Part shown: piece by piece, positions 1,581 through 39,660 of the stretch
How positions within the stretch are numbered: the first letter of the stretch is position 1
How the letters are laid out: every line of letters begins with the position of its first letter
Assembly: GCF_001194135.2 (NCBI RefSeq)
Contig: NC_068999.1
Location: forward strand, 17,108,206 to 17,148,336
Reading direction: 5' to 3'
DNA: 40,131 nt
Source of the DNA: Octopus bimaculoides
Lineage: Eukaryota
Position numbers and translations under genes: made by a program
The notes under the pieces: model-generated
Told to the model about the DNA's origin: nothing
Databases searched by the model: none
What the model saw: the letters and a program-made list of their open reading frames with translations, nothing else

Positions 1581-2217
1581 NNNNNNNNNNNNNNNNNNNN
1601 NNNNNNNNNNNNNNNNNNNNNNNNNNNNNNNNNNNNNNNNNNNNNNNNNNNNNNNNNNNNNNNNNNNNNNNNNNNNNNNNNNNNNNNNNNNNNNNNNNNN
1701 NNNNNNNNNNNNNNNNNNNNNNNNNNNNNNNNNNNNNNNNNNNNNNNNNNNNNNNNNNNNNNNNNNNNNNNNNNNNNNNNNNNNNNNNNNNNNNNNNNNN
1801 NNNNNNNNNNNNNNNNNNNNNNNNNNNNNNNNNNNNNNNNNNNNNNNNNNNNNNNNNNNNNNNNNNNNNNNNNNNNNNNNNNNNNNNNNNNNNNNNNNNN
1901 NNNNNNNNNNNNNNNNNNNNNNNNNNNNNNNNNNNNNNNNNNNNNNNNNNNNNNNNNNNNNNNNNNNNNNNNNNNNNNNNNNNNNNNNNNNNNNNNNNNN
2001 NNNNNNNNNNNNNNNNNNNNNNNNNNNNNNNNNNNNNNNNNNNNNNNNNNNNNNNNNNNNNNNNNNNNNNNNNNNNNNNNNNNNNNNNNNNNNNNNNNNN
2101 NNNNNNNNNNNNNNNNNNNNNNNNNNNNNNNNNNNNNNNNNNNNNNNNNNNNNNNNNNNNNNNNNNNNNNNNNNNNNNNNNNNNNNNNNNNNNNNNNNNN
2201 NNNNNNNNNNNNNNNNN

Positions 2218-2268
<51 letters not shown>
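1581..2268. other. Assembly gap (1581-2217) followed by (CA)n (2218-2268)
   Basis: N-run, then a pure CA repeat. Confidence 0.97.
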
Positions 2269-2270
<2 letters not shown>

Positions 2271-2617
2271 ATCGCTGTATTACTCATACTGAGTGTGCTT
2301 TGTCTGTCCGGGCGTGTGTCCGAATGTATTCGAACACTGTCATACGTATCAGAGCCGGTTCATTACTGCAAAGTAGAACGTCGCAGTCATCATTGAGTTA
2401 CTAATTTCCCGGAGTGAAGCTATTTTCGATTAGTGAAACAAGTTATGGCATGCAAGATATTGTGCTAAATAAAAATAATGAATAATGGATATTGTAAATG
2501 CTTTGAGTCATATTCAGAAAAGTGGATAAATTAATCATATTGTAGCATGACGCCTAATATTCATCCTAATACTGTTGATTTTCTTTCTATCAGTTCTGTC
2601 AATATTAGTTTCACAAT

Positions 2618-2735
2618 ATAGCACGGTGCCAGCAATTTTGAGGAGAAGCACGGGGCCAGCATATTGGAAGTCGATTATTTCGGATCCAGTGTTCAACTGG
2701 GATCTATCCTATCGACCCTGAAACGACGAAATTCT
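2618..2735 (-). mobile_element. Old, 5'-truncated tRNA-derived SINE fragment (family A core and tail)
   Basis: gtcgatt...ccagtgttcaactgg...tatcgaccctgaaacgacgaa aligns loosely with the better-preserved minus-strand copies at 24880-25062 and 25063-25295. Confidence 0.55.
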
Positions 2736-2739
2736 ACTA

Positions 2740-2905
2740 GGCAATATGCGTAGCGGCATTTCATCCGTCTTTACTTCCTGGGTTCAAATTCCACCGAGTC
2801 CCTATCGGTATCGATAAATTGAGTACCGGTGAAGCACTGAGGTCTACGTAAGTGACTCAGCCTCATACCCTTAAATTTCGAACCCCTGGGCCTACAGCAG
2901 AGAGG
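2740..2905 (+). mobile_element. Old tRNA-derived SINE (family A)
   Basis: tagcggcatttcatccgtctttacttcctgggttcaaattccaccgag...tcgataaattgagtacc...agcactgaggtc has a B-box-like GGGTTCAAATTCC and the core shared with 18444-18666 and 39153-39355. Confidence 0.7.
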
Positions 2906-3185
2906 ATTTTTTACTTTTAACACTGCTGTTGTTCCTCCTCCTCCTCCTCCTGTGAGCAACGACAGAGAGTAAAATAGGAAGAGGGAGAGACAGAGACAGA
3001 TTAGGGAAAAGATGAGAGAAAAAAACTTAAGTGAGAGGAGGGAAAAAAGAATTACAAAAAGGAAGAGAAAGAATACGAAACGGGGAGAGAGAAAACAATA
3101 CAAGTTAGAGTCGCATCAATATTATTTAGATAATTTCTTTGGAAATGGATGCGTGGCGTTCAGTCATATAATTCGTATAAATAAA

Positions 3186-3189
<4 letters not shown>

Positions 3190-3254
<65 letters not shown>

Positions 3255-3292
3255 CACACACACATACACACACACATACATACACACACACA
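3190..3292. repeat. (TA)n followed by (CA)/(CATA) microsatellite
   Basis: Direct reading. Confidence 0.95.
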
Positions 3293-4064
3293 TATTGACT
3301 GCACATGCAAAATGCATTAAGAGAGTGGTAGTTTCTGAAACATACAATTGCTTTTAGAAGAGAAGGTTCTTCTTACTAGATATATTGCGAAAACTGTTAT
3401 TTATTTATTTATTCATTTATTTCGTCTAGTAAATTTTCTACAACAAAAGTAATCAAGACATTCTTATTGGAAAATGGTTTCATAGTACTTGTGCAATTAA
3501 TGCAATCGTCGTTATTGGAAATGATCACTAGTTCTATTAAATTTACAGCTAATCAGTCTGAAACAATTAACAATTTAAATTATTATATTACCAAAGCTAT
3601 TTACTCCATTTTAAGCAATTAATCCGAAAGCAAGTCGGTCCTGAACTAAATATAAATTAAAGCTTGTCACTCAGAGCTCTTCGCTTCGTAATATAGTTGA
3701 ATTTAGTCTGTGTATAATTATGTAGTATTTTACATCGGCGGCATTGACTCAAATTTTTTCTGATATATTAGCTCACACGGGAATTGGATATTGTATACCA
3801 AGAGCGCATGTTGGAAATTTCTTTACATATTCTATGAGGGTTCGTAATTCATCGTAGAAAACTAAATGGTGTGATTGGTTATTTACAATGCCTGTTGAAA
3901 CTTACGCAAACCAAATGCATCCTGGTGGTGGACTGAATGCCATTCTACATTTTCCTTTGTTTATATATTAAGTACACATTCTGAAATTTTCTCTTCTCCC
4001 GAGGTCATGGTATTAAATCAAGTTTCCGCATGTTTTTTTTCTCTCTTTGCGCCATCAATTAAAT

Positions 4065-4299
4065 CAGAGATTCTCAACTTGGGGTTCATATAAGATTTTC
4101 TTGTTAGAATTTATGAGTAATAAATTGCTTATATCTTTACGATATACAAGATATTTTAAATTTTTTTGTACAATTCCTAATCACCTTTAATCATACAAAT
4201 ACAGCATATTTGTATATACATTAAATGATTATGGAGCTCCAGCAAATTAAAATAGGAACCGAAGGAGTCCATAGGCAGAAAAATTATCGCGAACCACTG
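4065..4299. mobile_element. Non-autonomous hAT (Charlie-like) MITE remnant inside the IR2 spacer
   Basis: Ends cagagattctcaac (4065) and atcgcgaaccactg (4299) are both degenerate versions of a CAGTGGTTCTCAAC terminal inverted repeat, the type that starts MER5A and MER20. Subterminal ggggttcata and ggagtccata motifs are present. The interior is AT-rich and non-coding. No 8-bp TSD is retained. Confidence 0.55.
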
Positions 4300-4510
4300 A
4301 GCTAGACGAACGACTTCTTGTGAGTTCTTTGGAGGTCACTATGGGATTGTCATAATTTTCATGTGGAAATACAAAGATGCTTTCCTATTGCTTTTTTGGG
4401 ATATTTAATAAAACAAAATTAAACCAGCTAAATCGTTGCTAGGGACTTTAAATCAATTGTACCCACTCCCACAATCCTTGTACGTTATTAGATATATTTC
4501 TTACTTCCAG

Positions 4511-4531
4511 GTGAACAAGCACTTTTTATCG
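4511..4531 (+). CDS. Candidate 21-nt phase 0/0 microexon (VNKHFLS), product unknown
   Basis: Acceptor atatttcttacttccag, donor TCG|gtaact, open in frame 0. Splice-signal pattern only. Confidence 0.15.
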
Positions 4532-4917
4532 GTAACTAGAAGTATTCATAAGTATTGTACTGGCGAGAAGCATATTTGATCCCGTTATCAACAACATTTC
4601 ACTCATAGGATTTTGTTGGAAATTTTGATTTATGTAATCCGTATATAATTCAGTATGTATATATAATTTGTACTTATAATATAAAGAACGGGAAAATGTA
4701 GAATGGCATTTAGTTCAGCACCAGGATGCTTTGTGGTTTGCGTAAGTCTCAACAGGCATTGAAAATAACCAATCACACCATTTAGTTTTCTACGATGAAT
4801 TACGAACCCTCATAGAATATCTCAAGAAATTTCCAACATACGCTCTTGGTATACAATATCCCTTTCCCGTGTGAGCTAATATATCAGAAAAAAATTGAGT
4901 CAATGCCGCTGATGTAA

Positions 4918-4977
4918 AATGCGTATTATAACAATCAAAATTTATATAATGCGTATTATAACAATCAAAAATTATAT
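4918..4977 (+). repeat. 30-bp tandem duplication at the outer end of the IR2 right arm
   Basis: aatgcgtattataacaatcaaaatttatat followed by aatgcgtattataacaatcaaaaattatat (1 mismatch). Confidence 0.95.
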
Positions 4978-5544
4978 TTAACTTTGAAATGGGACCTGAA
5001 TTTGGTTATTGGGGCCGGAATTCAGTGCGTGAGTGGTTTTAGATTATTGGTAATCCAACATGATATCAAAATGATACATTGTAGAATTTGAACTCTGACC
5101 TTACTGAGACGTAATTAACTATAAAGCAGGGCATTCTTCTTTTTCCTTTTCCTTTGTTCTTTATCCTTCATTTCCCTACTTTTATTACTAAACCACATTC
5201 CAAATGCCTAAAGCAAAATATAAAATGAACGCTGTTCTCATTTTTATATTTTTTGCTTCCCCCCTTTTTTTTTTCCTTAATATTTTGATGTCTTAATCTA
5301 GAAAATGGTATTATGTTCAAGGCTATTGCAGGGTTTTCAAAACTTTCAAAATCGGTTAAATGTATGTTAAAAAAAACATATGTTCTCAGGTGGATTAACA
5401 GCAATTTGTTATTCTGCGATAGAATGACTCAGGGTTAGGATTAGGGATAAGAACTGCAGAGAAAACGGAGAAGCGACTCGGTTAGGTCTAAGTAGAGATT
5501 GCACGAGAGTAAGAAGCTTAGGGTATCAAACGTCATTGCAGTAA

Positions 5545-5716
5545 TTGAAGAAGAGATAGACAAATAGATAGATACAGAGAGAGAGGAGGGAGATAGAAAG
5601 AGAAGCAGACCTAGAGACAGAGAGAGAGAGAACGAGAAGGGAGTGTGTATGTGTGAAAGGGAGAGAAAGAGAAGGCAGAGTATGTGTGTGTGAAAGAGAG
5701 AGAGAGAGAGAGAGAA
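5545..5716. repeat. GA-rich low-complexity tract ending in (GA)n
   Basis: Direct reading. Confidence 0.85.
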
Positions 5717-6659
5717 AGCATTCGTGAGTCGGACATAAGATTGTATTGGCAGTCGGTTCACGATTTATTAAGTGGTGTTGAGGTTATATGCTTTTCAGCC
5801 AATGCACCCCAGATGTGGTAGGAATATAGCATTGTGAGTCTCACTCGAGCATTATTGTGTACCCTTAGTTGTAACAGGAAACTGAATTTCTTTCTTCCTT
5901 GAATAGAAAGACTACGCATTGTGATGTAGCATGTGCTGTATTTGTTGAAGTTCTGAGTTTACCAGAAGAGATGTTTACTAATGGGGAAAAAATACCAGTC
6001 TTTGAGTATTTCAGATTTCTAAATGAGTGTTATTTAAATTTATGGGGAATATGATTCAATATTTTTTTTATATTTCTTTGTAGTCAACGTGTTTCATTAA
6101 TGGATTTAAGGTTGAAATTATTGTGTATTTCTGACTCTGATAATACACTCTTAGTAATATAAAATGAAATCAAATAATAATTACTACGTAAAAAATGAAA
6201 AAATGTTAGTATTTCTATTTTATTTTGTTCTTGCGATCCCCACTGATTAGTGTAATTCGTATACTCGGTTTTCTATTTTTGCATCAAAATTTTGTAAAAC
6301 GCTAGATATTCATGCCACGATTCAACATCTATTCACAGCTAGTGTTCAGCGTTAATGCTTTAAGGAAATACATGATTTCTTTCTTCCGGTGCTGTGGGTA
6401 TTTTAAAATTAAACATGCTCGTATCTGAGATATCAAGCCGATTTTTCATTATTACAAGCAGTACTTTCTTATAGCTAATCATAGGAGTACCATGTGAATG
6501 TATTCTAAATATCCTGACCTATCATTTCTTCTCTCGTTTACTGCCATTGCATAGTAATATGCATTTTGAAACATTTTTTATTCTGTTCGCTTCTGTTCGT
6601 CAAAGTCATGTGGGAGGTAAAATAAATAGAGCTTCGAACAGAACACATTGTATTCAAAT

Positions 6660-6745
6660 GGTAGAATCAGTCGAATGCTGACCAAAATTGCATGCGTAAT
6701 TATAAGTTCTGAGTTCAAACACCACCGAGTTTCCTTTGTCTCATA
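6660..6745 (+). mobile_element. Highly decayed SINE head fragment (family A)
   Basis: gttctgagttcaaacaccaccgagtttcctttgtctcat resembles gttctgagttcaaattccgccgaggtagactttgcctttcat of the 18444 copy. Confidence 0.45.
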
Positions 6746-7112
6746 TTTTCTGAAGCTATCAAGCAAAGTATCGAATCTTATGTATCACAACGTGGTTCAT
6801 ACAATCGACTATGCGCTTGAAGGATGTCTACAGTGAAAAGAGTAAAGAAACCAATAACAGACTATGTTTATGGTTAGCTTGATACGAGAAACCGATTGGT
6901 GGAAGCGTGGAAGAAATACATTTGAATCTAGAACGTTGTAATCCAAATCAGCATCTGATAAACATCGACGTTGATAAAAGAAGCCAAGGAAAATGCCTCT
7001 ACATGATTGTTTCAATGACGCGAAAGAGCCGCGAAATCTCCTTAAAATAACACCAAGGCGTGTTAGAAAAGATAATGTGATCAACCTAGGTTCCCAATAA
7101 ATAGGAGATATT

Positions 7113-7270
7113 CGGGATTACTCATGGCCGGAATGCCTTTGATCATAATTCTGATCAACACAAGTAGATCTGGAATTAAACAAAAACAGAAACATCATCA
7201 ACCATATCTACGACGAAGTCAACAACACCGAAAATGACGGCGAGAACTAGAAGAACAACGAAGACACAAA
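7113..7270 (+). mobile_element. Possible retroposon 3' end with decayed (CAA)n-type tail
   Basis: A short unique segment (catggccggaatgcctttgatcata) is followed by a degenerate AAC/GAC trinucleotide tract. A weaker reverse-oriented counterpart with a (GTT)-rich tract lies at about 13400-13500. Confidence 0.3.
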
Positions 7271-7550
7271 CTATGCTTTCATTTTCATAATATTGATTGA
7301 TGCGTATTTTATTTATTCAAGGTACTTTTTTCTCTTTATAATTTAATAACATTCTCTTGGATTTGCAAAAATATCCAAATCTCATTACATGATATTTTCT
7401 TTGTTTAAACCCACGTTCATATCCAGCTCTGACTGAACAAATGCACGTTCATATTCATTCTTGCCATTCGTCATATTTATCCAGTAAAAGAATAATTAAA
7501 ACTGCATGAGCAATACGTGCTGTTTATTTAATGCGGGTTTTTTTTTCCAG

Positions 7551-7593
7551 AGAGAATTAGTTGCTAATATTAGAGGTCGAAGAGCCATCCACA
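7551..7593 (+). CDS. Candidate 43-nt internal coding exon, phase 0 to 1 (RELVANIRGRRAIH), product unknown
   Basis: Strong acceptor gggtttttttttccag, consensus donor ACA|gtaagt, and only one stop-free frame. No protein family recognised. Confidence 0.35.
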
Positions 7594-7904
7594 GTAAGTT
7601 ATATTTCATTAGATACACATTTATTTATAATTGGTGTGATCTTTTCCGCTTTTATCCAAAGAAATGATTAAATGCTTAATATCTAAATCCTCAAACGCAT
7701 TGGGAATAGATTTCAGGGAGTAGCAGCGCCATAAACTCAGAACTTATACAGAAGCGTGATTATGTTCAAGTGTATTCTTGTGTTCCTTATAATAATAAAA
7801 GTACCAACAAGCAAATGGTATGTGTGTATATATATATATATATCTTAGTTTAATACCGTGAATAGTAAAAATTATTATAGGCATATAGAACAGTTCTGTA
7901 ACAT

Positions 7905-7919
7905 TGAACTTTGACCTTG
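7905..7919 (-). promoter_or_regulatory. Nuclear-receptor DR1 element overlapping an SF-1/FTZ-F1/ERR-type half-site
   Basis: Plus tgaactttgaccttg reads CAAGGTCAAAGTTCA on the minus strand, i.e. AGGTCA-A-AGTTCA (DR1) with a 5' CA extension. Motif match only. Confidence 0.3.
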
Positions 7920-8299
7920 CTATGTATTCGCCTCTGTGGTAGAATCGATAAGAGACATCAAGGTCTAGGTCCTTGATGTATAGTAAAAAATAGAGAAGAA
8001 AAACAATTATATATAAGAGAATGAGATGGACGAAATAATCATCAAAGATCTAAATAATATCCTCTGGATTTTGATGATTCTTTTTTCTTTCTGCGACTGC
8101 TATGCGGAAGCAATTCGGATTAGTGAGTCTTCCGAAGATAGCTTACTTTTGTCACGCAGCAGTCATTTTCAGAAGTCAAGAAAAGCGCCACGGGCAATGC
8201 CCTATTTCCCTTTACAATTTATTAGATGTAAAAGAAAATCAGTGTTGTTAAGAATTGATAAGATCACAAATCTAAGATGTCTAATCTATCTATCTATTA

Positions 8300-8530
8300 A
8301 TCTCTCTATGTATTTTCATATACATATATACTTACATACAAACATACACACGGAGACACATACCTCTATATNNNNNNNNNNNNNNNNNNNNNNNNNNNNN
8401 NNNNNNNNNNNNNNNNNNNNNNNNNNNNNNNNNNNNNNNNNNNNNNNNNNNNNNNNNNNNNNNNNNNNNNNNNNNNNNNNNNNNNNNNNNNNTACATACA
8501 TACATGCATAAATACATGCGGGCGCACACG
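8300..8530. other. Assembly gap 8372-8492 within (TA)/(CATA) microsatellite
   Basis: N-run with simple-repeat flanks. Confidence 0.95.
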
Positions 8531-9557: not shown

Positions 9558-10165
9558 ACATATATATATATATACNNNNNNNNNNNNNNNNNNNNNNNNN
9601 NNNNNNNNNNNNNNNNNNNNNNNNNNNNNNNNNNNNNNNNNNNNNNNNNNNNNNNNNNNNNNNNNNNNNNNNNNNNNNNNNNNNNNNNNNNNNNNNNNNN
9701 NNNNNNNNNNNNNNNNNNNNNNNNNNNNNNNNNNNNNNNNNNNNNNNNNNNNNNNNNNNNNNNNNNNNNNNNNNNNNNNNNNNNNNNNNNNNNNNNNNNN
9801 NNNNNNNNNNNNNNNNNNNNNNNNNNNNNNNNNNNNNNNNNNNNNNNNNNNNNNNNNNNNNNNNNNNNNNNNNNNNNNNNNNNNNNNNNNNNNNNNNNNN
9901 NNNNNNNNNNNNNNNNNNNNNNNNNNNNNNNNNNNNNNNNNNNNNNNNNNNNNNNNNNNNNNNNNNNNNNNNNNNNNNNNNNNNNNNNNNNNNNNNNNNN
10001 NNNNNNNNNNNNNNNNNNNNNNNNNNNNNNNNNNNNNNNNNNNNNNNNNNNNNNNNNNNNNNNNNNNNNNNNNNNNNNNNNNNNNNNNNNNNNNNNNNNN
10101 NNNNNNNNNNNNNNNNNNNNNNNNNNNNNNNNNNNNNNNATATATATATATATATATATATATAG
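9558..10165. other. Assembly gap 9576-10138 flanked by (TA)n
   Basis: N-run. Confidence 0.97.
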
Positions 10166-10631: not shown

Positions 10632-10782
10632 NNNNNNNNNNNNNNNNNNNNNNNNNNNNNNNNNNNNNNNNNNNNNNNNNNNNNNNNNNNNNNNNNNNNN
10701 NNNNNNNNNNNNNNNNNNNNNNNNNNNNNNNNNNNNNNNNNNNNNNNNNNNNNNNNNNNNNNNNNNNNNNNNNNNNNNNNNN
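10565..10782. other. (TA)n followed by assembly gap 10632-10782
   Basis: Direct reading. Confidence 0.97.
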
Positions 10783-12557: not shown

Positions 12558-12658
12558 TATATATATATATATATATNNNNNNNNNNNNNNNNNNNNNNNN
12601 NNNNNNNNNNNNNNNNNNNNNNNNNNNNNNNNNNNNNNNNNNNNNNNNNNNNNNTATA

Positions 12659-13957: not shown

Positions 13958-14082
13958 NNNNNNNNNNNNNNNNNNNNNNNNNNNNNNNNNNNNNNNNNNN
14001 NNNNNNNNNNNNNNNNNNNNNNNNNNNNNNNNNNNNNNNNNNNNNNNNNNNNNNNNNNNNNNNNNNNNNNNNNNNNNNNNNN

Positions 14083-15896: not shown

Positions 15897-16430
15897 ATGT
15901 AACAAAATCTCGCTTCCCAAACACATGGTTCCGAATAAAGTCGCAGTGCATAGCACGTTGTGTAAGTGTCTTCTGCTAAAGCTTCGTGTTGAGTAAAGCC
16001 TTGTGAGTAGATTTGGTGGACGGAAACAGACAAAGATCCACCTCTCTCTGTTNNNNNNNNNNNNNNNNNNNNNNNNNNNNNNNNNNNNNNNNNNNNNNNN
16101 NNNNNNNNNNNNNNNNNNNNNNNNNNNNNNNNNNNNNNNNNNNNNNNNNNNNCTTGTGAGTGGATTTGGTAGACGGAAACCAAAAGAAGCCCGTCGTATA
16201 TACGTATATATGTATGTGTGTTTGTCCGTCTGTGTTTATATTCCAATGCTTGACAACCAGTGATGGTTTATGTATGTCCTCGTAACTTGGCAAAAAAAAC
16301 TGATAGAATAAGTAACAGACTTTAAAAAAATAAAAATTAAAAAAACTTAAGTACTGGGGTCGATTTATTCCACTAAACCTTTTAAAGCAGCGTCTCATCG
16401 AGGCTGCAAGTAAAATAAGTAAAATATAAA
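15897..16430 (+). mobile_element. Family B SINE sequence spanning a 100-bp gap (16053-16152)
   Basis: Head cgcttcccaaacacatggttcc, body aaagccttgtgagtagatttgg, and 3' module gcttgacaacc...ctggggtcgatttattccactaa. Confidence 0.8.
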
Positions 16431-16465
16431 CGGTAAAATATAAAACATACGCAGAGAACGTTTCT

Positions 16466-16692
16466 TATTTCTTTATTGTCCACAAGGGGCCAAACATAGA
16501 GGGGACAAACAAGGACAGACAAAGGGATCAAGTCAATTACATCGACCCAGTGCGTTACTGGTACTTAATCTATCGACTCCGAAAGGATGAAAGGCAAAGT
16601 CGACTTCGGTGGAATTTGAACTCAGAACGTAACGGTAGACGAAATACCGCTAAGCATTTGGCCCGGCGTGCTAACCTTTCTGCCAGCTCGCC
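16466..16692 (-). mobile_element. Young, near full-length family A SINE with 12-bp TSD
   Basis: The minus strand reads GGCGAGCTGGCAGAAAGGTTAGC...GAGTTCAAATTCC...AAAGAAATA. It is flanked by identical gagaacgtttct at 16454-16465 and 16693-16704. Confidence 0.93.
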
Positions 16693-16979
16693 GAGAACGT
16701 TTCTGTTTACAAAAATTTATTCGATAATTGCAGTTTATTGAAGGTGTTCAATGCGTTATTTCATATATACAACTCACAGAATTGAAAAATAGAAGGAAAG
16801 TTTTGCAATGGAGTCAGAAAAACGAATTTTGTAGACAATGAGTATAGTTAAATCGAGCATACAAATTTGGAAGACATGTAAAACAAAACGTAGAGAAAGA
16901 AGGGAAATAGACGATAAGAGTACGAGATGATATATGTTAATAGAAGTGTTTAATAGAAGTGAAGTCATGCACGTTAGCA

Positions 16980-18302: not shown

Positions 18303-18725
18303 ATTGGCAGAATCTTTAGAGTGTCGGATAAAATGCATTACCGCATTTGCTCCGGATTTATATGTTGTTAGTTCAAGCCGGTTGAAGTTCAACGCTGCCT
18401 TTTATTCTCCTGAGGTCGATAAAATTAGTACCACACATGTACTAAGGCGGCGAACTGGCAGAAACGTTAGCACACCGGGCGAAATGCTTAGCGGTATTTC
18501 GTCTGCCGCTACGTTCTGAGTTCAAATTCCGCCGAGGTAGACTTTGCCTTTCATCCTTTCGGGGTCGATCAAATAAGTACCAGTTACGCACTGGGGTCGG
18601 TATAATCGACTTAATCCGTTTGTCTGTCCCCTCTGTGTGTAGCCCCTTGTGGGTAGTAAAGAAATAACACATGTACTGGGCTTTTATTGAACCCTAAGAA
18701 TCGTTGATCTTGTGTCAAAATTATG
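18303..18725 (+). mobile_element. Old family A SINE split by the younger insertion at 18444-18666
   Basis: ttggcagaatctttagagtgtcggataaaatgc...gttcaagcc...gaggtcgataaaattagtacc[acacatgtact | insert | acacatgtact]ggg...cttgtgtcaaaatt. Confidence 0.7.
18444..18666 (+). mobile_element. Young full-length family A SINE with 11-bp TSD
   Basis: A-box-like TGGCAGAAACGTTAG (18456-18470), B-box-like GAGTTCAAATTCC (18518-18530), end aaagaaata. TSD acacatgtact at 18433-18443 and 18667-18677. Confidence 0.95.
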
Positions 18726-20417: not shown

Positions 20418-20543
20418 TTTTTTCTTTTATTTTTTTATGTGTTTCAGTCATTTGACTGCGGCCATGCTGGAGCACCACTTTTTAGTCGAGCAAACCGACC
20501 CTAGAACTTATTCTTTGTTAGCCTAGTACTTATTCTATCGGTC
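20418..20543 (-). mobile_element. 3' end of family B SINE
   Basis: gtttcagtcatttgactgcggccatgctggagcacc...tagtcgag...cttattctttgttagcctagtacttattctatcggtc is the reverse complement of 24390-24500. Confidence 0.88.
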
Positions 20544-20619: not shown

Positions 20620-20955
20620 ACATGTGCATGTGTATGTGAGAGTGTGCAATGAGGGCGTGTAACCTCGACATGTGGATGTGTGCGTCTGTAATGTGTGGGT
20701 GTGTGGTTGACGGTGTGTGTGCTGGGAAGTGGTCAGTGCTAGTGTGTGCAGGTTTGTGTGATGTGGTGTGATATGGTGTGGTGTGGTGTGGAGTGATGTG
20801 GTGTGGTGGTGTGTGTATGGTGTGGCTGAAGGGAAGTCTTCACTGCTAGTGTGTGTGTGTGGGGGGGNNNNNNNNNNNNNNNNNNNNNNNNNNNNNNNNN
20901 NNNNNNNNNNNNNNNNNNNNNNNNNNNNNNNNNNNNNNNNNNNNNNNNNNNNNNN

Positions 20956-23282: not shown

Positions 23283-24045
23283 NNNNNNNNNNNNNNNNNN
23301 NNNNNNNNNNNNNNNNNNNNNNNNNNNNNNNNNNNNNNNNNNNNNNNNNNNNNNNNNNNNNNNNNNNNNNNNNNNNNNNNNNNNNNNNNNNNNNNNNNNN
23401 NNNNNNNNNNNNNNNNNNNNNNNNNNNNNNNNNNNNNNNNNNNNNNNNNNNNNNNNNNNNNNNNNNNNNNNNNNNNNNNNNNNNNNNNNNNNNNNNNNNN
23501 NNNNNNNNNNNNNNNNNNNNNNNNNNNNNNNNNNNNNNNNNNNNNNNNNNNNNNNNNNNNNNNNNNNNNNNNNNNNNNNNNNNNNNNNNNNNNNNNNNNN
23601 NNNNNNNNNNNNNNNNNNNNNNNNNNNNNNNNNNNNNNNNNNNNNNNNNNNNNNNNNNNNNNNNNNNNNNNNNNNNNNNNNNNNNNNNNNNNNNNNNNNN
23701 NNNNNNNNNNNNNNNNNNNNNNNNNNNNNNNNNNNNNNNNNNNNNNNNNNNNNNNNNNNNNNNNNNNNNNNNNNNNNNNNNNNNNNNNNNNNNNNNNNNN
23801 NNNNNNNNNNNNNNNNNNNNNNNNNNNNNNNNNNNNNNNNNNNNNNNNNNNNNNNNNNNNNNNNNNNNNNNNNNNNNNNNNNNNNNNNNNNNNNNNNNNN
23901 NNNNNNNNNNNNNNNNNNNNNNNNNNNNNNNNNNNNNNNNNNNNNNNNNNNNNNNNNNNNNNNNNNNNNNNNNNNNNNNNNNNNNNNNNNNNNNNNNNNN
24001 NNNNNNNNNNNNNNNNNNNNNNNNNNNNNNNNNNNNNNNNNNNNN
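23235..24045. other. (TA)n followed by assembly gap 23283-24045
   Basis: Direct reading. Confidence 0.97.
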
Positions 24046-24284: not shown

Positions 24285-24510
24285 GTATATGTATATGTAT
24301 GTGTGTGTTTGCTCCCCCCCACAAATTCGCTTGACAACCGATTCTAGTATGCTTACGTCCCCGTAAGTTAGCTGTTCGGCAAAAATAGGCCGATATAGTA
24401 AGTACTAGACTTACAAAGAATAAGAGATGGAGTCGATCTGATCGACTAAAGGCGGTGCTCCAGCATGGCCACATTCAAATGACTGAAACAAGTAAAAGAG
24501 TAAAGAGAGA
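24285..24510 (+). mobile_element. 3' half of family B SINE
   Basis: cgcttgacaaccg...cgtccccgtaagttagctgttcggcaaaa...gtcgatctgatcgactaaaggcggtgctccagcatggcc...aatgactgaaacaagtaaaagag. Confidence 0.88.
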
Positions 24511-24879: not shown

Positions 24880-25062
24880 TTTTTTTCTCTAGGCACAAGG
24901 CACAAAAGTTTTGGGGAGGAGGCCAGTGAATTAGATCGACCCCAGTACGCAACTGCTACTTAATTTATCAAGCTTTAAAAGATGAAAGGCACAGTCGACC
25001 TCAGCTGAATTTGGACACAGACGAAATACCGCCAAGCATTTCGCCCGGGTGCCTTCGTTTCT
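24880..25062 (-). mobile_element. Older family A SINE body with the cttgtgcc-type tail, joined to the younger copy at AGAAACG
   Basis: aggcacaagg...aattagatcgacccagtacgcaactg...gatgaaaggcacagtcgacctc...cagacgaaataccgccaagcatttcgcccgg, then cgtttct at 25056-25062. Confidence 0.8.
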
Positions 25063-25295
25063 TATTTCTTTATTGCCCACAAGGGGCTAAACATAGAGGG
25101 GACAAACAAGGACAGGCAAAGGGATTAAGTCGATTGCACCGTCCCCAGTGCGTAACTGGTACTTAATTTATCGACCCCGAAAGGATGAATGGCGAAGTCG
25201 ACTTTGGCAGAATTTGAACTCAGAACGTAACGGCAGACGAAATACGGCTAAGCATTTCGCCCGGCGTGCTAACGTTTCTGCCAGCTCTTCGCCTT
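25063..25295 (-). mobile_element. Young full-length family A SINE
   Basis: About 90% identical to 16466-16692 and 18444-18666. The minus strand runs AAGGCGAAGAGCTGGCAGAAACGTTAGC...AAAGAAATA. Confidence 0.93.
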
Positions 25296-26292: not shown

Positions 26293-26572
26293 CGCGAGGG
26301 TGTGTGGTAAGAAGTTTGCTTCTCAACAACATGGTTCAGAGTTTAGTGCCATTGCGTGGCATCTTTGTCAAGTGTCTTTTGCTATAGCCTCGGGCTGACT
26401 AAAGCCTTGTGAGTAGATTTGGTAGACGGAAACTGAAAGAATCCACTTGTGTATGTGTCTGTATGTGCTTGTATATGTGTGTGTGTGTGGGGGGTCTCTT
26501 AAATTAGCTGTTCGGCAGAAGAGATCGATAAAATATGTACCAGGCTTTTAAAAAATAAGTATGGGGTCGATA
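26293..26572 (+). mobile_element. Family B SINE with internal deletion in the 3' module
   Basis: tRNA-like head tgtgtggtaagaagtttgcttctcaacaacatggttcagagtttagtgcc, body, (TG) tract, and ctgttcggcagaagagatcgata...atggggtcga. Confidence 0.85.
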
Positions 26573-26589
26573 TATTAATACATGCATAC

Positions 26590-26842
26590 ATACGTACACA
26601 CACACACACGCACACACGCACACACACACACACACACACACANNNNNNNNNNNNNNNNNNNNNNNNNNNNNNNNNNNNNNNNNNNNNNNNNNNNNNNNNN
26701 NNNNNNNNNNNNNNNNNNNNNNNNNNNNNNNNNNNNNNNNNNNNNNNNNNNNNNNNNNNNNNNNNNNNNNNNNNNNNNNNNNNNNNNNNNNNNNNNNNNN
26801 NNNNNNNNNNNNNNNNNNNNNNNNTATATATATATATATATT
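26590..26842. other. (CA)n, assembly gap 26643-26824, (TA)n
   Basis: Direct reading. Confidence 0.97.
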
Positions 26843-31782: not shown

Positions 31783-32215
31783 NNNNNNNNNNNNNNNNNN
31801 NNNNNNNNNNNNNNNNNNNNNNNNNNNNNNNNNNNNNNNNNNNNNNNNNNNNNNNNNNNNNNNNNNNNNNNNNNNNNNNNNNNNNNNNNNNNNNNNNNNN
31901 NNNNNNNNNNNNNNNNNNNNNNNNNNNNNNNNNNNNNNNNNNNNNNNNNNNNNNNNNNNNNNNNNNNNNNNNNNNNNNNNNNNNNNNNNNNNNNNNNNNN
32001 NNNNNNNNNNNNNNNNNNNNNNNNNNNNNNNNNNNNNNNNNNNNNNNNNNNNNNNNNNNNNNNNNNNNNNNNNNNNNNNNNNNNNNNNNNNNNNNNNNNN
32101 NNNNNNNNNNNNNNNNNNNNNNNNNNNNNNNNNNNNNNNNNNNNNNNNNNNNNNNNNNNNNNNNNNNNNNNNNNNNNNNNNNNNNNNNNNNNNNNNNNNN
32201 NNNNNNNNNNNNNNN

Positions 32216-34643: not shown

Positions 34644-34843
34644 ATATATATATATATATATATATATANNNNNNNNNNNNNNNNNNNNNNNNNNNNNNNN
34701 NNNNNNNNNNNNNNNNNNNNNNNNNNNNNNNNNNNNNNNNNNNNNNNNNNNNNNNNNNNNNNNNNNNNNNNNNNNNNNNNNNNNNNNNNNNNNNNNNNNN
34801 NNNNNNNNNNNNNNNNNNNNNNNNNNNNNNNNNNATATATATA
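34605..34843. other. (TATC)n-(TA)n and assembly gap 34669-34834
   Basis: Direct reading. Confidence 0.97.
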
Positions 34844-37297: not shown

Positions 37298-39152
37298 GTT
37301 ATTATCAATATCAAAGACATAATTTAATAGGTGTCACACAATATAATGAGTTCTGGGAGTTACAAGAGTTGATATAACACATGGTGGGATAAAATGAATG
37401 GAAGATTGTCACGTTGAGTGTTAGAACATAGTATATCAGAATAAACCATAAATTGTACTACAATAGATATATTAGAAATAGCAAACAATTTTACCTCAAA
37501 TACAAGCCAACGGTTTAAACAGGAGAAGGATGTGTTTCATTATAATGTTGCTCGACTACGGCTGATTTATGGTTAAATAAAATGGACAAAATAACTCGAG
37601 CTACATAAACTCAACAGTAACAACAGTAAGTTGATATCAACCATAATTCAGTATTCGATTTCCAGGACCAGAAACGAAAACCTCCGGCGAACAGTGACTA
37701 CTGAAGCTGTTTGACTGAAGTATGTTGATAACTTAATCTTAAGACATACGAAGCTATTGACTATATTTTAATATAAGCTTATTTAGGCAGAATTTTGTAT
37801 CGATTATTTTCCAAAACCTAAGCAAAATAATCTCAATTTGAAAGTAAAATATGCCCCTATATTATATTCAAAATACACGCCTAAGAATGGCATAATGAAT
37901 TATTTTAGAAAAGGAACAGTGATTTTATTTAACTTCAAATTGACCTTAGTCAATATAAGTATCATTTTCCAGCGTCCTATGATTATTTCTTGATTTCCTG
38001 CCAAATTATTAAAATATCGAAAAAAAATTGTTTACAAGAGCTGCTGTCAGTTCATTAAAATAAGAAATTAATGAAAGAATTGCAAAAGTAGATGAACTTT
38101 TACCATCCAGAATTTTACGATCAAAAGTGGTATAATGCAAATAGTTTTAACACTATTGACATTAGTATAAAAGTGAGTAACATTCAGTCAAGGAGATTTT
38201 TCTAAATATTACCAAATACTATAGAACAAAGCCTTTATGAAGTGTTGCAAGTATTTTTTTTTTTATATATATAATTGAATATAGTATAAAAATGAAATAA
38301 CATTAGATATCATTCAATTTTATTATTTTGCTTAACGTTTCAGTAATTTGTGGAAAATATATTAAAGGCAATTACAAAAATTTGCTCTATAACATAGCAA
38401 TATATGGCTCCAGCATTAGAATGGAAAGGAAACACAATTTGCTAAATTTTGATCTGGAGTCAAATATTAATTATTTCCTCACAGCTGCAACATTAATAAA
38501 GCTTCATAGTATTTTGAACATTTAACAATTAATAATTAATATAAAATGGAAATATAGTAATATTGATTCCATTCTTTGATAGCCAAAAATATTTCAAAAT
38601 GTGGTTCGCAATAGAAATGTTGGCCTCACATTGTTTCCACATATTAAAGAATGATTGCCTCTTGATCTTTATCATCTGCAAATGGATGACGTTGTTTGCC
38701 TATATAATTTATTTTACATTTGATTTGGGAAACAAATGTAAAGTTTTATTTATCATATCGTTATAAAAGAAAATATCAATATCCAGGGACCAAATTTAAT
38801 TAAAAATAGAATGTTTTTTTTCGCCATGTACTCAGAAGTACTTGGAGATGGATGCCACTTGTTTGGGGATAATCCAAATCGGCTTCATGCACATGAACTA
38901 ATATTTAAATGTAATTTCAGCACTTGCAATTATTTCGAAATACGTTGGCATCTGGACGCAGAACAGAATGCTATATTTGATGTAGTTGGACATCAATGAA
39001 TGTTATAAAGATGCCTTCTTTTATATTTTTTTTTTTTTACTTCAAATCAAGATTACATAGATATGAATATCCAGAAAAAAACTGAGATTTTAATTAAGAT
39101 ATAAATCACGATTGTCCGTCAATATAAATTCCTTGCAATATTACAAATACTC

Positions 39153-39355
39153 AAGGTGGAGAGCTGTCAGAATCGTTAGCATGCAGGGCAAAATGCTAAG
39201 CGGCATTTCGTTCATCTTTACGCTTTGATTTCAAATTCCGCTTTGCCTTCATCATTTCAGCGTTAATAAAATAAATATCAATTGAATCATGGGGTCGTTG
39301 TCATCGACTAGCCCCGTCCACCCGAAAGCACTGGACTCATGCCAAAATTTGAAAT
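39153..39355 (+). mobile_element. Old family A SINE, tandem copy 1
   Basis: aaggtggagagctgtcagaatcgttagcatgcagggcaaaatgctaagcggcatttcg...ttcaaattccg...ggggtcg...gccaaaatttgaa. Confidence 0.85.
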
Positions 39356-39370
39356 TATTTTTACTAATAC

Positions 39371-39510
39371 TTTCAATTTCCGTCAACACCGACATTGTCT
39401 TTTATCCTTTTGGCGTCGCAAAAGTACCAGTTGTACACTGGGGTTGATGAAATCGACTTACTCCAAATGCCGGACTCGCTGGTCTTGTGCCAAAATTTGA
39501 AACTGATATT
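39371..39510 (+). mobile_element. Old family A SINE, tandem copy 2 (5'-truncated at the B box)
   Basis: ttttatccttttggcgtcg...aagtaccagttgtacactggggttgatgaaatcgactta...ggtcttgtgccaaaatttgaaac. Confidence 0.8.
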
Positions 39511-39522
39511 ACTAATGTTATT

Positions 39523-39660
39523 AAGGTTGCAAGCTGGCAATATGGTTACAACGCCTAGTAAAATGCCACCGGGGACAACTTCGCGTTTTATCCTGTCGGG
39601 GTCGATAAAATAAGTTTCAGTTGAACCCTGGGGACGATGAAGTCGAATTACCCCCCAGCG
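39523..39660 (+). mobile_element. Old family A SINE, tandem copy 3 (internal deletion)
   Basis: aaggttgcaagctggcaa...aaaatgcc...ggggtcgataaaataag...ctggggacgatgaagtcgaattacccc. Confidence 0.75.

What the first reader, a model, noticed from the sequence alone, without database searches (positions are those of the whole stretch)
3727..4920. IR2: about 255-bp inverted arms at about 92% identity forming a 1.2-kb fold-back
Seen: 3727-3980 is the reverse complement of 4665-4920 with a 58-bp perfect core. The arm sequence is complex, appears nowhere else in the window, and has no ORF or clear TSD. Similarity seems to decay gradually outward. Established: inverted repeats over 100 bp form dsRNA that ADAR edits, coleoid cephalopods edit RNA extensively, and flanking intronic inverted repeats can promote exon skipping or back-splicing. 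Inference: an undescribed fold-back or long-TIR non-autonomous transposon, or a single-copy palindrome kept similar by arm-to-arm conversion or selection. This is the strongest unexplained structure in the window.
Basis: partly seen in the sequence, partly recalled or inferred. Interest (0 to 1): 0.72.

Follow-up and report, generated by a model that had tools for sequence, protein, structure and literature searches.

The report
Inverted repeat from two separate copies
The 255-bp inverted repeat is real, but it looks like two separate copies of one short non-coding sequence, one inserted later in the opposite orientation, which is an ordinary feature of a repeat-rich animal genome.

Summary
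Bases 3727-3980 are the reverse complement of 4665-4920: 236 of 256 columns match (92.2%), with a 58-bp perfect core and a 684-bp spacer (BLAST E 5e-103). There is no third copy in the window.

The unit carries no recognisable ORF, protein domain, tRNA or Rfam RNA. Its base composition matches its flanks.

The new finding is that the right arm is bracketed by a 10-11-bp direct repeat that abuts it exactly: CCGTA-TATAA at 4639-4648 and GCGTATTATAA at 4921-4931. Deleting 4649-4931 restores an in-phase 30-bp minisatellite (flank similarity p about 0.005). tRNA-like SINE copies in the same window carry perfect 10- and 12-bp target-site duplications, the same size class. The left arm and the whole 1.2-kb unit have no such duplication.

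I therefore read IR2 as a composite. One roughly 260-bp sequence is present twice, and the right copy was inserted separately by a duplication-generating, retroposition-like event (confidence about 0.55). A single long-TIR or fold-back transposon remains possible (about 0.3).

Interest is low.

The parts
3727..3980 (+). Left arm (copy A). Homology may continue to 3985 (CTGAA). It has no flanking direct repeat.
   Evidence: 92.2% to the right arm; no TSD, p = 0.67-0.89
3981..4627 (.). Unique spacer with no ORF, domain or internal palindrome. Its composition is like the flanks (GC 0.32, CpG observed/expected 0.86).
4628..4648 (+). Diverged first unit of the 30-bp minisatellite (ATTTATGTAATCCGTATATAA). 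Its last 10 nt, 4639-4648 (CCGTATATAA), are the left copy of the proposed target-site duplication.
   Evidence: the only hit in the window with 2 or fewer mismatches to the 17-mer ATTTATATAATGCGTAT; 19/22, p = 0.005
4649..4664 (-). AT/ACAT-type microsatellite stretch ending in CTGAA when read on the minus strand. It is either the tail of the inserted copy or a microsatellite expansion within it. CTGAA matches 3981-3985 after the left arm.
   Evidence: A 3970-3995 aligned to the reverse complement of 4640-4675. This is weak evidence: a 5-8 nt match after an 11-nt indel.
4665..4920 (-). Right arm (copy A'), the inverted copy. Together with 4649-4664 it forms a 272-bp insert.
4921..4931 (+). Right copy of the proposed target-site duplication (GCGTATTATAA). 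It starts exactly at the outer end of the inverted repeat.
4918..4977 (+). 30-bp minisatellite with 2 copies at 96% identity. This is the target into which the right arm was inserted. The unit core TATAATGCGTATTATA is itself nearly palindromic.
   Evidence: D2; TRF score 113

Best explanation
IR2 is a composite, not one mobile element. One non-coding sequence of about 260 bp is present twice, 0.66 kb apart and in opposite orientation.

The right copy (4649-4920) was inserted on its own into a 30-bp minisatellite. The event duplicated 10-11 bp of target: CCGTA-TATAA on one side and GCGTATTATAA on the other. That size is the one left by LINE-driven (target-primed) retroposition of the SINEs in this same window.

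The likeliest source is therefore a dispersed SINE-like short repeat family of which both arms are members. The less likely variant is that the right arm is a templated copy of the neighbouring left arm, made by a replication or repair template switch at the near-palindromic minisatellite.

Since the two copies arose they have drifted apart by about 8%. The pair has no demonstrated function. If both copies lie in one transcript they would pair into an imperfect 254-bp dsRNA stem, the standard kind of ADAR or Dicer substrate formed by inverted SINE pairs.

Shown here: the repeat, its sharp ends, the abutting direct repeat, and the restored minisatellite. Inferred: the insertion mechanism, family membership, and any RNA role.
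For: 1. The flanks of the right arm share 19/22 nt in direct orientation. This gives p = 0.005 against 4000 random site pairs at the same distance in this window. A narrower test gave p = 0.03-0.04.

2. The repeat abuts the insert on both sides. The right copy begins at 4921, exactly where the inverted repeat ends.

3. Deleting 4649-4931 gives ATTTATGTAATCCGTATATAACAATCAAA directly followed by ATTTATATAATGCGTATTATAACAATCAAA. That is two in-phase units at 27/30 identity.

4. The 17-mer that starts the unit has only one other hit in 40 kb with 2 or fewer mismatches, and that hit sits next to the inner end of the right arm.

5. tRNA-like SINE copies in the same window carry perfect abutting duplications of 12 bp (GAGAACGTTTCT, copy at 16459-16700) and 10 bp (CACATGTACT, copy at 18440-18667).

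6. Both ends of the arms are sharp, as expected for copies of a discrete unit.

7. The whole 1.2-kb unit has no duplication and no transposon hallmarks.

8. Published background: SINEs are about 40% of octopus repeat content (PMC8967140). Nearby inverted repeats are the conventional source of edited dsRNA in animals (PMC9989829).
Against: The left arm has no target-site duplication (p = 0.67-0.89), although SINE copies of similar or greater age in this window keep perfect ones.

No third copy of the arm occurs in 40 kb, so the family, if there is one, is not very abundant. Two copies within 1 kb would then be a coincidence of well under 1-3% per window by my own rough estimate.

The arms show no recognisable tRNA, 5S or 7SL head. 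This negative is weak, because Rfam does not flag the window's evident SINE either.

The flank statistic is partly post hoc: about 11 flank tests were run. The minisatellite unit is AT-rich and nearly palindromic, and the same flanks also match in inverted orientation (20/25, p = 0.011). A further unit-like motif lies at 3163-3190, so such motifs are locally frequent.

The greater divergence of the inner third of the arms fits a transposon with imperfect inner TIRs better than it fits two copies of a discrete unit.
Confidence: 0.55

Rival explanations
1. IR2 is a single non-autonomous DNA transposon of about 1.2 kb with 254-bp terminal inverted repeats. Candidates are a deletion derivative of a Tc1-like element with long IRs of the Minos or Sleeping Beauty type, or a fold-back element. 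It would have been mobilised in trans by a transposase that binds the arm termini.
For: The arm length (254 bp) and total size fit long-IR Tc1-like derivatives. DNA elements, including TcMar-Tc1 and Mariner, are about 17% of octopus repeats (PMC8967140).

A single insertion explains two arms at one locus with no third copy in the window. It needs no coincidence of proximity.

The outer two-thirds of the arms are better conserved than the inner third (Fisher p = 0.007), as is common for TIRs.

A TA dinucleotide lies at 3731-3732 and 4915-4916, leaving termini CATCGG...CTGATG that start with CA.
Against: No target-site duplication of 3 bp or more abuts the unit.

TA is its own reverse complement, so a TA inside an inverted repeat is automatically mirrored and proves nothing. 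The repeat also runs 4 nt past it.

The arms contain no IR/DR-type internal direct repeat (terminal 45 nt against the rest of the arm, p = 0.6) and no tandem subrepeats.

No transposase remnant appears in the spacer (Pfam; protein search).

The composition equals that of the flanks.

This model must dismiss as chance the abutting 10-11-bp direct repeat around the right arm and the in-phase restoration of the minisatellite, because one repeat copy lies inside the supposed element.
Confidence: 0.3
2. IR2 is a selected single-copy hairpin-RNA locus, like Drosophila hpRNA genes. Its transcript would fold into a long stem that is processed to small RNAs or acts as an ADAR substrate, with the arms kept similar by selection or arm-to-arm conversion.
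For: The predicted fold contains the full-length stem (MFE -525.5 kcal/mol for 1218 nt). The arm is unique within the window.
Against: The arms have diverged by 8% with indels. Mismatches show no bias toward pairing-preserving changes: only 5 of 18 are transitions. That is not what conversion or selection for pairing would give.

The arms have no homology to any protein-coding sequence that could be a target. There is no evidence of transcription, and reads were unavailable.
Confidence: 0.05
3. IR2 is an assembly artefact of a gapped short-read scaffold, in which one arm was falsely duplicated in inverted orientation.
For: The window has 12 runs of N at microsatellites, so it comes from a gapped scaffold assembly.
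Against: The arms differ at 18 substitutions and 2 indels, whereas artefactual fold-backs are identical. The spacer is a unique 684 bp. No gap lies between 2217 and 8372. The right arm has structured junctions.
Confidence: 0.03

Closest known systems
Inverted SINE pairs (for example inverted Alu pairs, IRAlus), the classic source of intramolecular dsRNA edited by ADAR
   Same: There are two copies of about 260 bp in opposite orientation less than 1 kb apart. One copy has an abutting duplication of 10-11 bp, the size seen on SINEs in this window. An A/T-rich microsatellite-like stretch lies next to one end. The predicted RNA stem is long and imperfect.
   Different: No pol III head was recognised. 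The arms are unrelated to the window's abundant tRNA-like SINE. The left copy lacks a duplication. There is no third copy in 40 kb.
Long-IR Tc1-like transposons and their deletion derivatives (Minos with 255-bp IRs; Sleeping Beauty/IR-DR group with about 230-bp IRs). Named from my own knowledge, not tested against their sequences.
   Same: The arm length is about 254 bp and the overall size about 1.2 kb. A TA lies near the ends, and the termini begin with CA if the TA is taken as the target.
   Different: There are no paired internal binding-site repeats and no transposase remnant. The TA is uninformative. A direct repeat brackets one arm only.
Fold-back elements (Drosophila FB, Galileo). Named from my own knowledge.
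   Same: The arms are long and inverted, there is no coding capacity, and similarity is lower toward the centre.
   Different: FB arms are built of tandem subrepeats and the elements carry 7-9-bp duplications. Neither is present here.
Template-switch or microhomology-mediated inverted duplications (FoSTeS/MMBIR, quasi-palindrome template switching). Named from my own knowledge.
   Same: The copy is local and inverted within about 1 kb. The copy ends are sharp. A short duplication sits at the insertion point. The insertion point is a near-palindromic minisatellite that could stall a replication fork.
   Different: Described events are usually tens of bp or many kb. A clean 10-11-bp staggered duplication is more typical of endonuclease-driven insertion.

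Membership tests
DNA transposon with terminal inverted repeats (any superfamily) | A target-site duplication directly flanks the two TIR ends | tested here: not met
   No abutting direct repeat of 3 bp or more was found. Flank test p = 0.33-0.34. Only self-complementary dinucleotides (AT, TA) occur, and these are uninformative inside an inverted repeat.
DNA transposon with terminal inverted repeats (any superfamily) | Multiple dispersed copies share both TIRs | not testable with these tools
   No genome or read access. There is no second copy in the window. External scans were empty.
Tc1-like IR/DR elements | Each long IR contains an outer and an inner direct repeat (transposase binding sites) | tested here: not met
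   Aligning the terminal 45 nt against the rest of the arm gives score 9.0 against a shuffle mean of 9.1-9.2, p = 0.60-0.66.
Tc1-like IR/DR elements | A DDE transposase, or remnants of one, lies between the IRs | tested here: not met
   Pfam scan of all stop-free spacer and arm segments found 0 families at E up to 10. The protein database search found 0 hits at E up to 1. Non-autonomous derivatives may lack any remnant.
Fold-back (FB-like) elements | The arms are composed of tandem subrepeats | tested here: not met
   No direct repeat family lies within the arms. TRF finds none at 3727-3980 or 4665-4917.
SINE / non-LTR retroposon copy | A variable-length target-site duplication abuts the copy | tested here: inconclusive
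   Right arm: CCGTA-TATAA and GCGTATTATAA abut 4649-4920, flank p = 0.005. Left arm: none (p = 0.67-0.89).
SINE / non-LTR retroposon copy | A pol III-type head (tRNA, 5S or 7SL derived, with A and B boxes) | tested here: inconclusive
   ARAGORN and Rfam found nothing. Rfam also misses the window's evident tRNA-like SINE, so the test lacks power.
SINE / non-LTR retroposon copy | Many dispersed copies exist in the genome | not testable with these tools
   
hpRNA / functional hairpin locus | The locus is transcribed and yields small RNAs or edited reads, and the arms are conserved by compensatory change | not testable with these tools
   No read data and no orthologous sequences were available.

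The most novel reading that the evidence does not exclude
The arms exist only at this locus, and the 1.2-kb fold-back is a transcribed hairpin-RNA gene. It would be born by a templated inverted insertion into a minisatellite and would yield endogenous small RNAs or a dedicated ADAR substrate in a cephalopod.
Probability: 0.05. Interest if true: 0.6.

Novelty: new member of a known kind. Interest (0 to 1): 0.15.

Why it matters
It matters little by itself. Inverted pairs of short repeats are common in repeat-rich animal genomes and are the usual source of long dsRNA for ADAR.

The useful point is methodological. A long inverted repeat without an outer target-site duplication should not be filed as a fold-back transposon before each arm is checked for its own insertion signature. 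Here one arm has one.

If the locus lies in a transcribed intron of an RNA-editing-rich cephalopod, it would be one more candidate hyper-editing substrate.

Tried and rejected
No reads were used, and read laying was not attempted.

2. Copy-number proxy through proteins. Six-frame stop-free segments of both arms were searched against 5.8 billion proteins and gave 0 hits at E up to 10. The same search for the spacer plus flanks 2300-8300 gave 0 hits at E up to 1. Exact look-up of 10 window ORFs found none in the collection. The database evidently holds no ORFs from this non-coding DNA.

3. Exact-pattern scans of the metagenome, prokaryote-genome and viral collections used a 24-mer from the perfect core and a 22-mer from the arm terminus. 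The only hit was a 26/28-nt match in an Acidobacteriota MAG that does not extend. About 0.5 chance hits were expected.

4. Rfam at gathering and at E up to 10, and ARAGORN: nothing credible.

5. Pfam on arm and spacer segments: nothing.

6. IR/DR structure within the arms: rejected.

7. Homology of the arms to the window's tRNA-like SINE family: rejected (best p = 0.05-0.09, inconsistent orientation).

8. Extension of the inverted repeat into the spacer or the outer flanks: rejected.

9. Compositional distinctness of the unit: none. GC is 0.32-0.35 against 0.335 for the window, and CpG observed/expected is 0.86-0.90 against 0.84.

10. Literature: no description of this sequence or of the SINE motifs was found. 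The supplements of PMC8967140 hold only small tables.

Full report
OBSERVATION

The inverted repeat is present exactly as described. A local alignment puts 3727-3980 against the reverse complement of 4665-4920, with 236 identical positions in 256 columns (92.2%) and two single-base gaps. The longest uninterrupted match is 58 nt, at 3827-3884. The arms are separated by 684 bp.

A word-7 blastn of 3600-5050 against the whole window gives E = 5e-103 for the arm pair. Nothing else scores below E = 0.01, so neither the arms nor the spacer recur in the 40 kb.

The sequence is not low-complexity. The region 2218-8371 contains no assembly gap. The arms differ by 18 substitutions and 2 indels, so a fold-back assembly artefact is unlikely.

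SHAPE OF THE SIMILARITY

Beyond both ends of the arms the similarity stops. Alignments anchored at the arm boundaries and extended outward or inward score no better than dinucleotide shuffles (outer p = 0.27, inner p = 0.57). The two halves of the spacer are not palindromic.

Inside the arms the spacer-proximal third is more diverged: 11 differences in 69 columns against 9 in 187 (Fisher p = 0.007). Only 5 of the 18 substitutions are transitions. The ends are sharp, and the gradient runs toward the loop.

CONTENT AND CONTEXT

No start-to-stop ORF in the unit exceeds 48 aa, and none in an arm exceeds 37 aa. Several searches found nothing:
- Stop-free segments of the arms and spacer hit no Pfam family at E up to 10.
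- The arms hit no protein among 5.8 billion.
- The spacer plus 2300-8300 hit no protein.
- There is no tRNA and no credible Rfam match.

GC content and CpG observed/expected of the arms (0.35; 0.9) and spacer (0.32; 0.86) equal those of the flanks and of the window (0.335; 0.84).

The window as a whole is AT-rich non-coding DNA with 12 N gaps at microsatellites. It holds several copies of a tRNA-like SINE of about 230 bp. I could not verify the organism. The SINE-rich picture agrees with what is published for octopus genomes: SINEs about 40%, LINEs about 30% and DNA elements about 17% of repeat content (PMC8967140).

SEARCH FOR INSERTION SIGNATURES

For the 1.2-kb unit as a whole there is no target-site duplication. 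The best direct match between its outer flanks is ordinary (p = 0.33-0.34). The only abutting candidates are AT or TA. Both are their own reverse complement, so they are automatically mirrored inside any inverted repeat and carry no information. The left arm alone also has no flanking direct repeat (p = 0.67-0.89).

The right arm is different. Its inner and outer flanks share 19 of 22 positions in direct orientation: ATTTATGTAATCCGTA-TATAA at 4628-4648 and ATTTATATAATGCGTATTATAA at 4940-4961. This gives p = 0.005 against 4000 random site pairs at the same spacing in this window.

The outer flank is a 30-bp minisatellite at 4918-4977, with two units at 96% identity. The 17-mer that begins its unit has a single other hit in the window with 2 or fewer mismatches. 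That hit lies next to the inner end of the right arm.

Read in register, unit positions 12-22 occur on both sides of a 272-bp insert and abut it:
- CCGTA-TATAA at 4639-4648
- the insert at 4649-4920
- GCGTATTATAA at 4921-4931

The right copy starts at the very base where the inverted repeat ends. Deleting 4649-4931 yields two in-phase units that are 27/30 identical.

The 16 nt between the left repeat copy and the aligned arm (4649-4664) read ATATATACATACTGAA on the arm's own strand. This is a microsatellite-like stretch followed by CTGAA, and CTGAA is also what follows the left arm at 3981-3985. That last match is short and weak.

CALIBRATION WITHIN THE WINDOW

The SINE copy at 16459-16700 is flanked by a perfect 12-bp duplication (GAGAACGTTTCT). 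The copy at 18440-18667 is flanked by a perfect 10-bp one (CACATGTACT). So retroposition in this genome leaves duplications of the size seen around the right arm.

Rfam fails to flag even this evident SINE. The lack of a recognised pol III head in the IR2 arms therefore says little.

INTERPRETATION

The most economical reading is that IR2 is a composite. A sequence of about 260 bp occurs twice, and the right copy was inserted separately, in inverted orientation, into a minisatellite. The mechanism made a 10-11-bp staggered target duplication, which most resembles LINE-driven retroposition.

This favours two members of a dispersed SINE-like family. A templated copy of the neighbouring left arm, made by a replication or repair template switch at the near-palindromic minisatellite, is the alternative origin within the same reading. 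I give the composite reading 0.55 overall, split roughly evenly between these two origins with a slight preference for the dispersed family.

WHAT COUNTS AGAINST THE COMPOSITE READING

- The left arm has no duplication, although equally or more diverged SINEs nearby keep theirs.
- There is no third copy in 40 kb, so proximity would be a coincidence under the dispersed-family variant.
- The flank statistic is partly post hoc, with about eleven flank tests run.
- The minisatellite unit is AT-rich and nearly palindromic, so the same flanks also match in inverted orientation (20/25, p = 0.011).
- Another unit-like motif lies at 3163-3190.
- The inner-third divergence gradient fits a transposon with imperfect inner TIRs better.

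A unitary long-TIR element, such as a Tc1-like long-IR derivative, therefore keeps about 0.3. It failed the tests I could run:
- no duplication around the unit
- no IR/DR internal repeats (p = 0.6)
- no tandem subrepeats
- no transposase remnant

These failures lower membership but do not exclude a degenerate non-autonomous family.

FUNCTION

Nothing indicates a function. Folded as RNA, 3715-4932 forms the full-length imperfect stem (MFE -525.5 kcal/mol). Pairing of nearby inverted repeats is the conventional source of hyper-edited dsRNA in animals (PMC9989829). If the locus is transcribed as one RNA it would be a plausible ADAR or Dicer substrate.

Whether it is transcribed, edited or intronic could not be tested. 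The 8% divergence without a pairing-preserving bias argues against conversion or selection keeping the arms alike.

WHAT COULD NOT BE DONE

The decisive measurement is the copy number and context of the arm in the source genome and its relatives. It was out of reach. The DNA collections available are viral, prokaryotic and metagenomic, and they returned only one chance 26/28-nt match. The protein collections contain no ORFs from this DNA.

VERDICT

IR2 is a real but ordinary structure, most likely two separately placed copies of a short repeat. Novelty: a new instance of a known kind. Interest: 0.15.

Noticed in passing
window 16459-16700 (-), 18440-18667 (+), 25056-25290 (-); weaker copies at about 24930-25062, 39148-39309, 39372-39650 and 2740-2857: This is a repeat family of about 230 bp (84-91% between the best copies). 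It has a tRNA-like head (GGCGAGCTGGCAGAAACG…GAGTTCAAATTCCGCCG, B-box-like by eye) and an A-rich tail (AATAAAGAAATAAGAAA). It is evidently a SINE. Two copies carry perfect target-site duplications of 12 bp (GAGAACGTTTCT) and 10 bp (CACATGTACT). Rfam and ARAGORN do not flag it.
   Followed up: partly
window 16465-16693 versus 18448-18667: Two of these SINE copies form another inverted repeat: about 230-bp arms at 84% identity, about 1.75 kb apart. It is a clear example in the same window of an inverted repeat made by two independent insertions.
   Followed up: partly
window 4918-4977, with related motifs at 4628-4648 and 3163-3190: A 30-bp minisatellite (AATGCGTATTATAACAATCAAAAATTATAT, 2 copies at 96%) whose core TATAATGCGTATTATA is nearly palindromic. 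The 9-mer AATNCGTAT occurs 6 times in the window, and 4 of those fall within 3170-4956.
   Followed up: yes
window 1581-2217, 8372-8492, 9576-10139, 10632-10782, 12577-12654, 13958-14082, 16053-16152, 20868-20955, 23283-24045, 26643-26824, 31783-32215, 34669-34834: There are twelve runs of N. Most are bordered by (AT)n, (AC)n or (AG)n microsatellites. The window comes from a gapped scaffold in which microsatellites broke the assembly.
   Followed up: no
window 20426-20541 versus 24390-24504; 15912-16041 versus 26318-26446; 1288-1370 versus 1495-1580: Further repeat pairs at 79-86% identity over 83-131 bp: one inverted, one direct, and one inverted next to a gap. They are unclassified.
   Followed up: no
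L001 170-191 (Acidobacteriota MAG contig CAWETV010000008.1): A 26/28-nt match to the arm terminus (TACATCGGCGGCATTGACTCAA…). It does not extend. About 0.5 such hits are expected by chance in 596 Gb, so I treat it as chance.
   Followed up: yes
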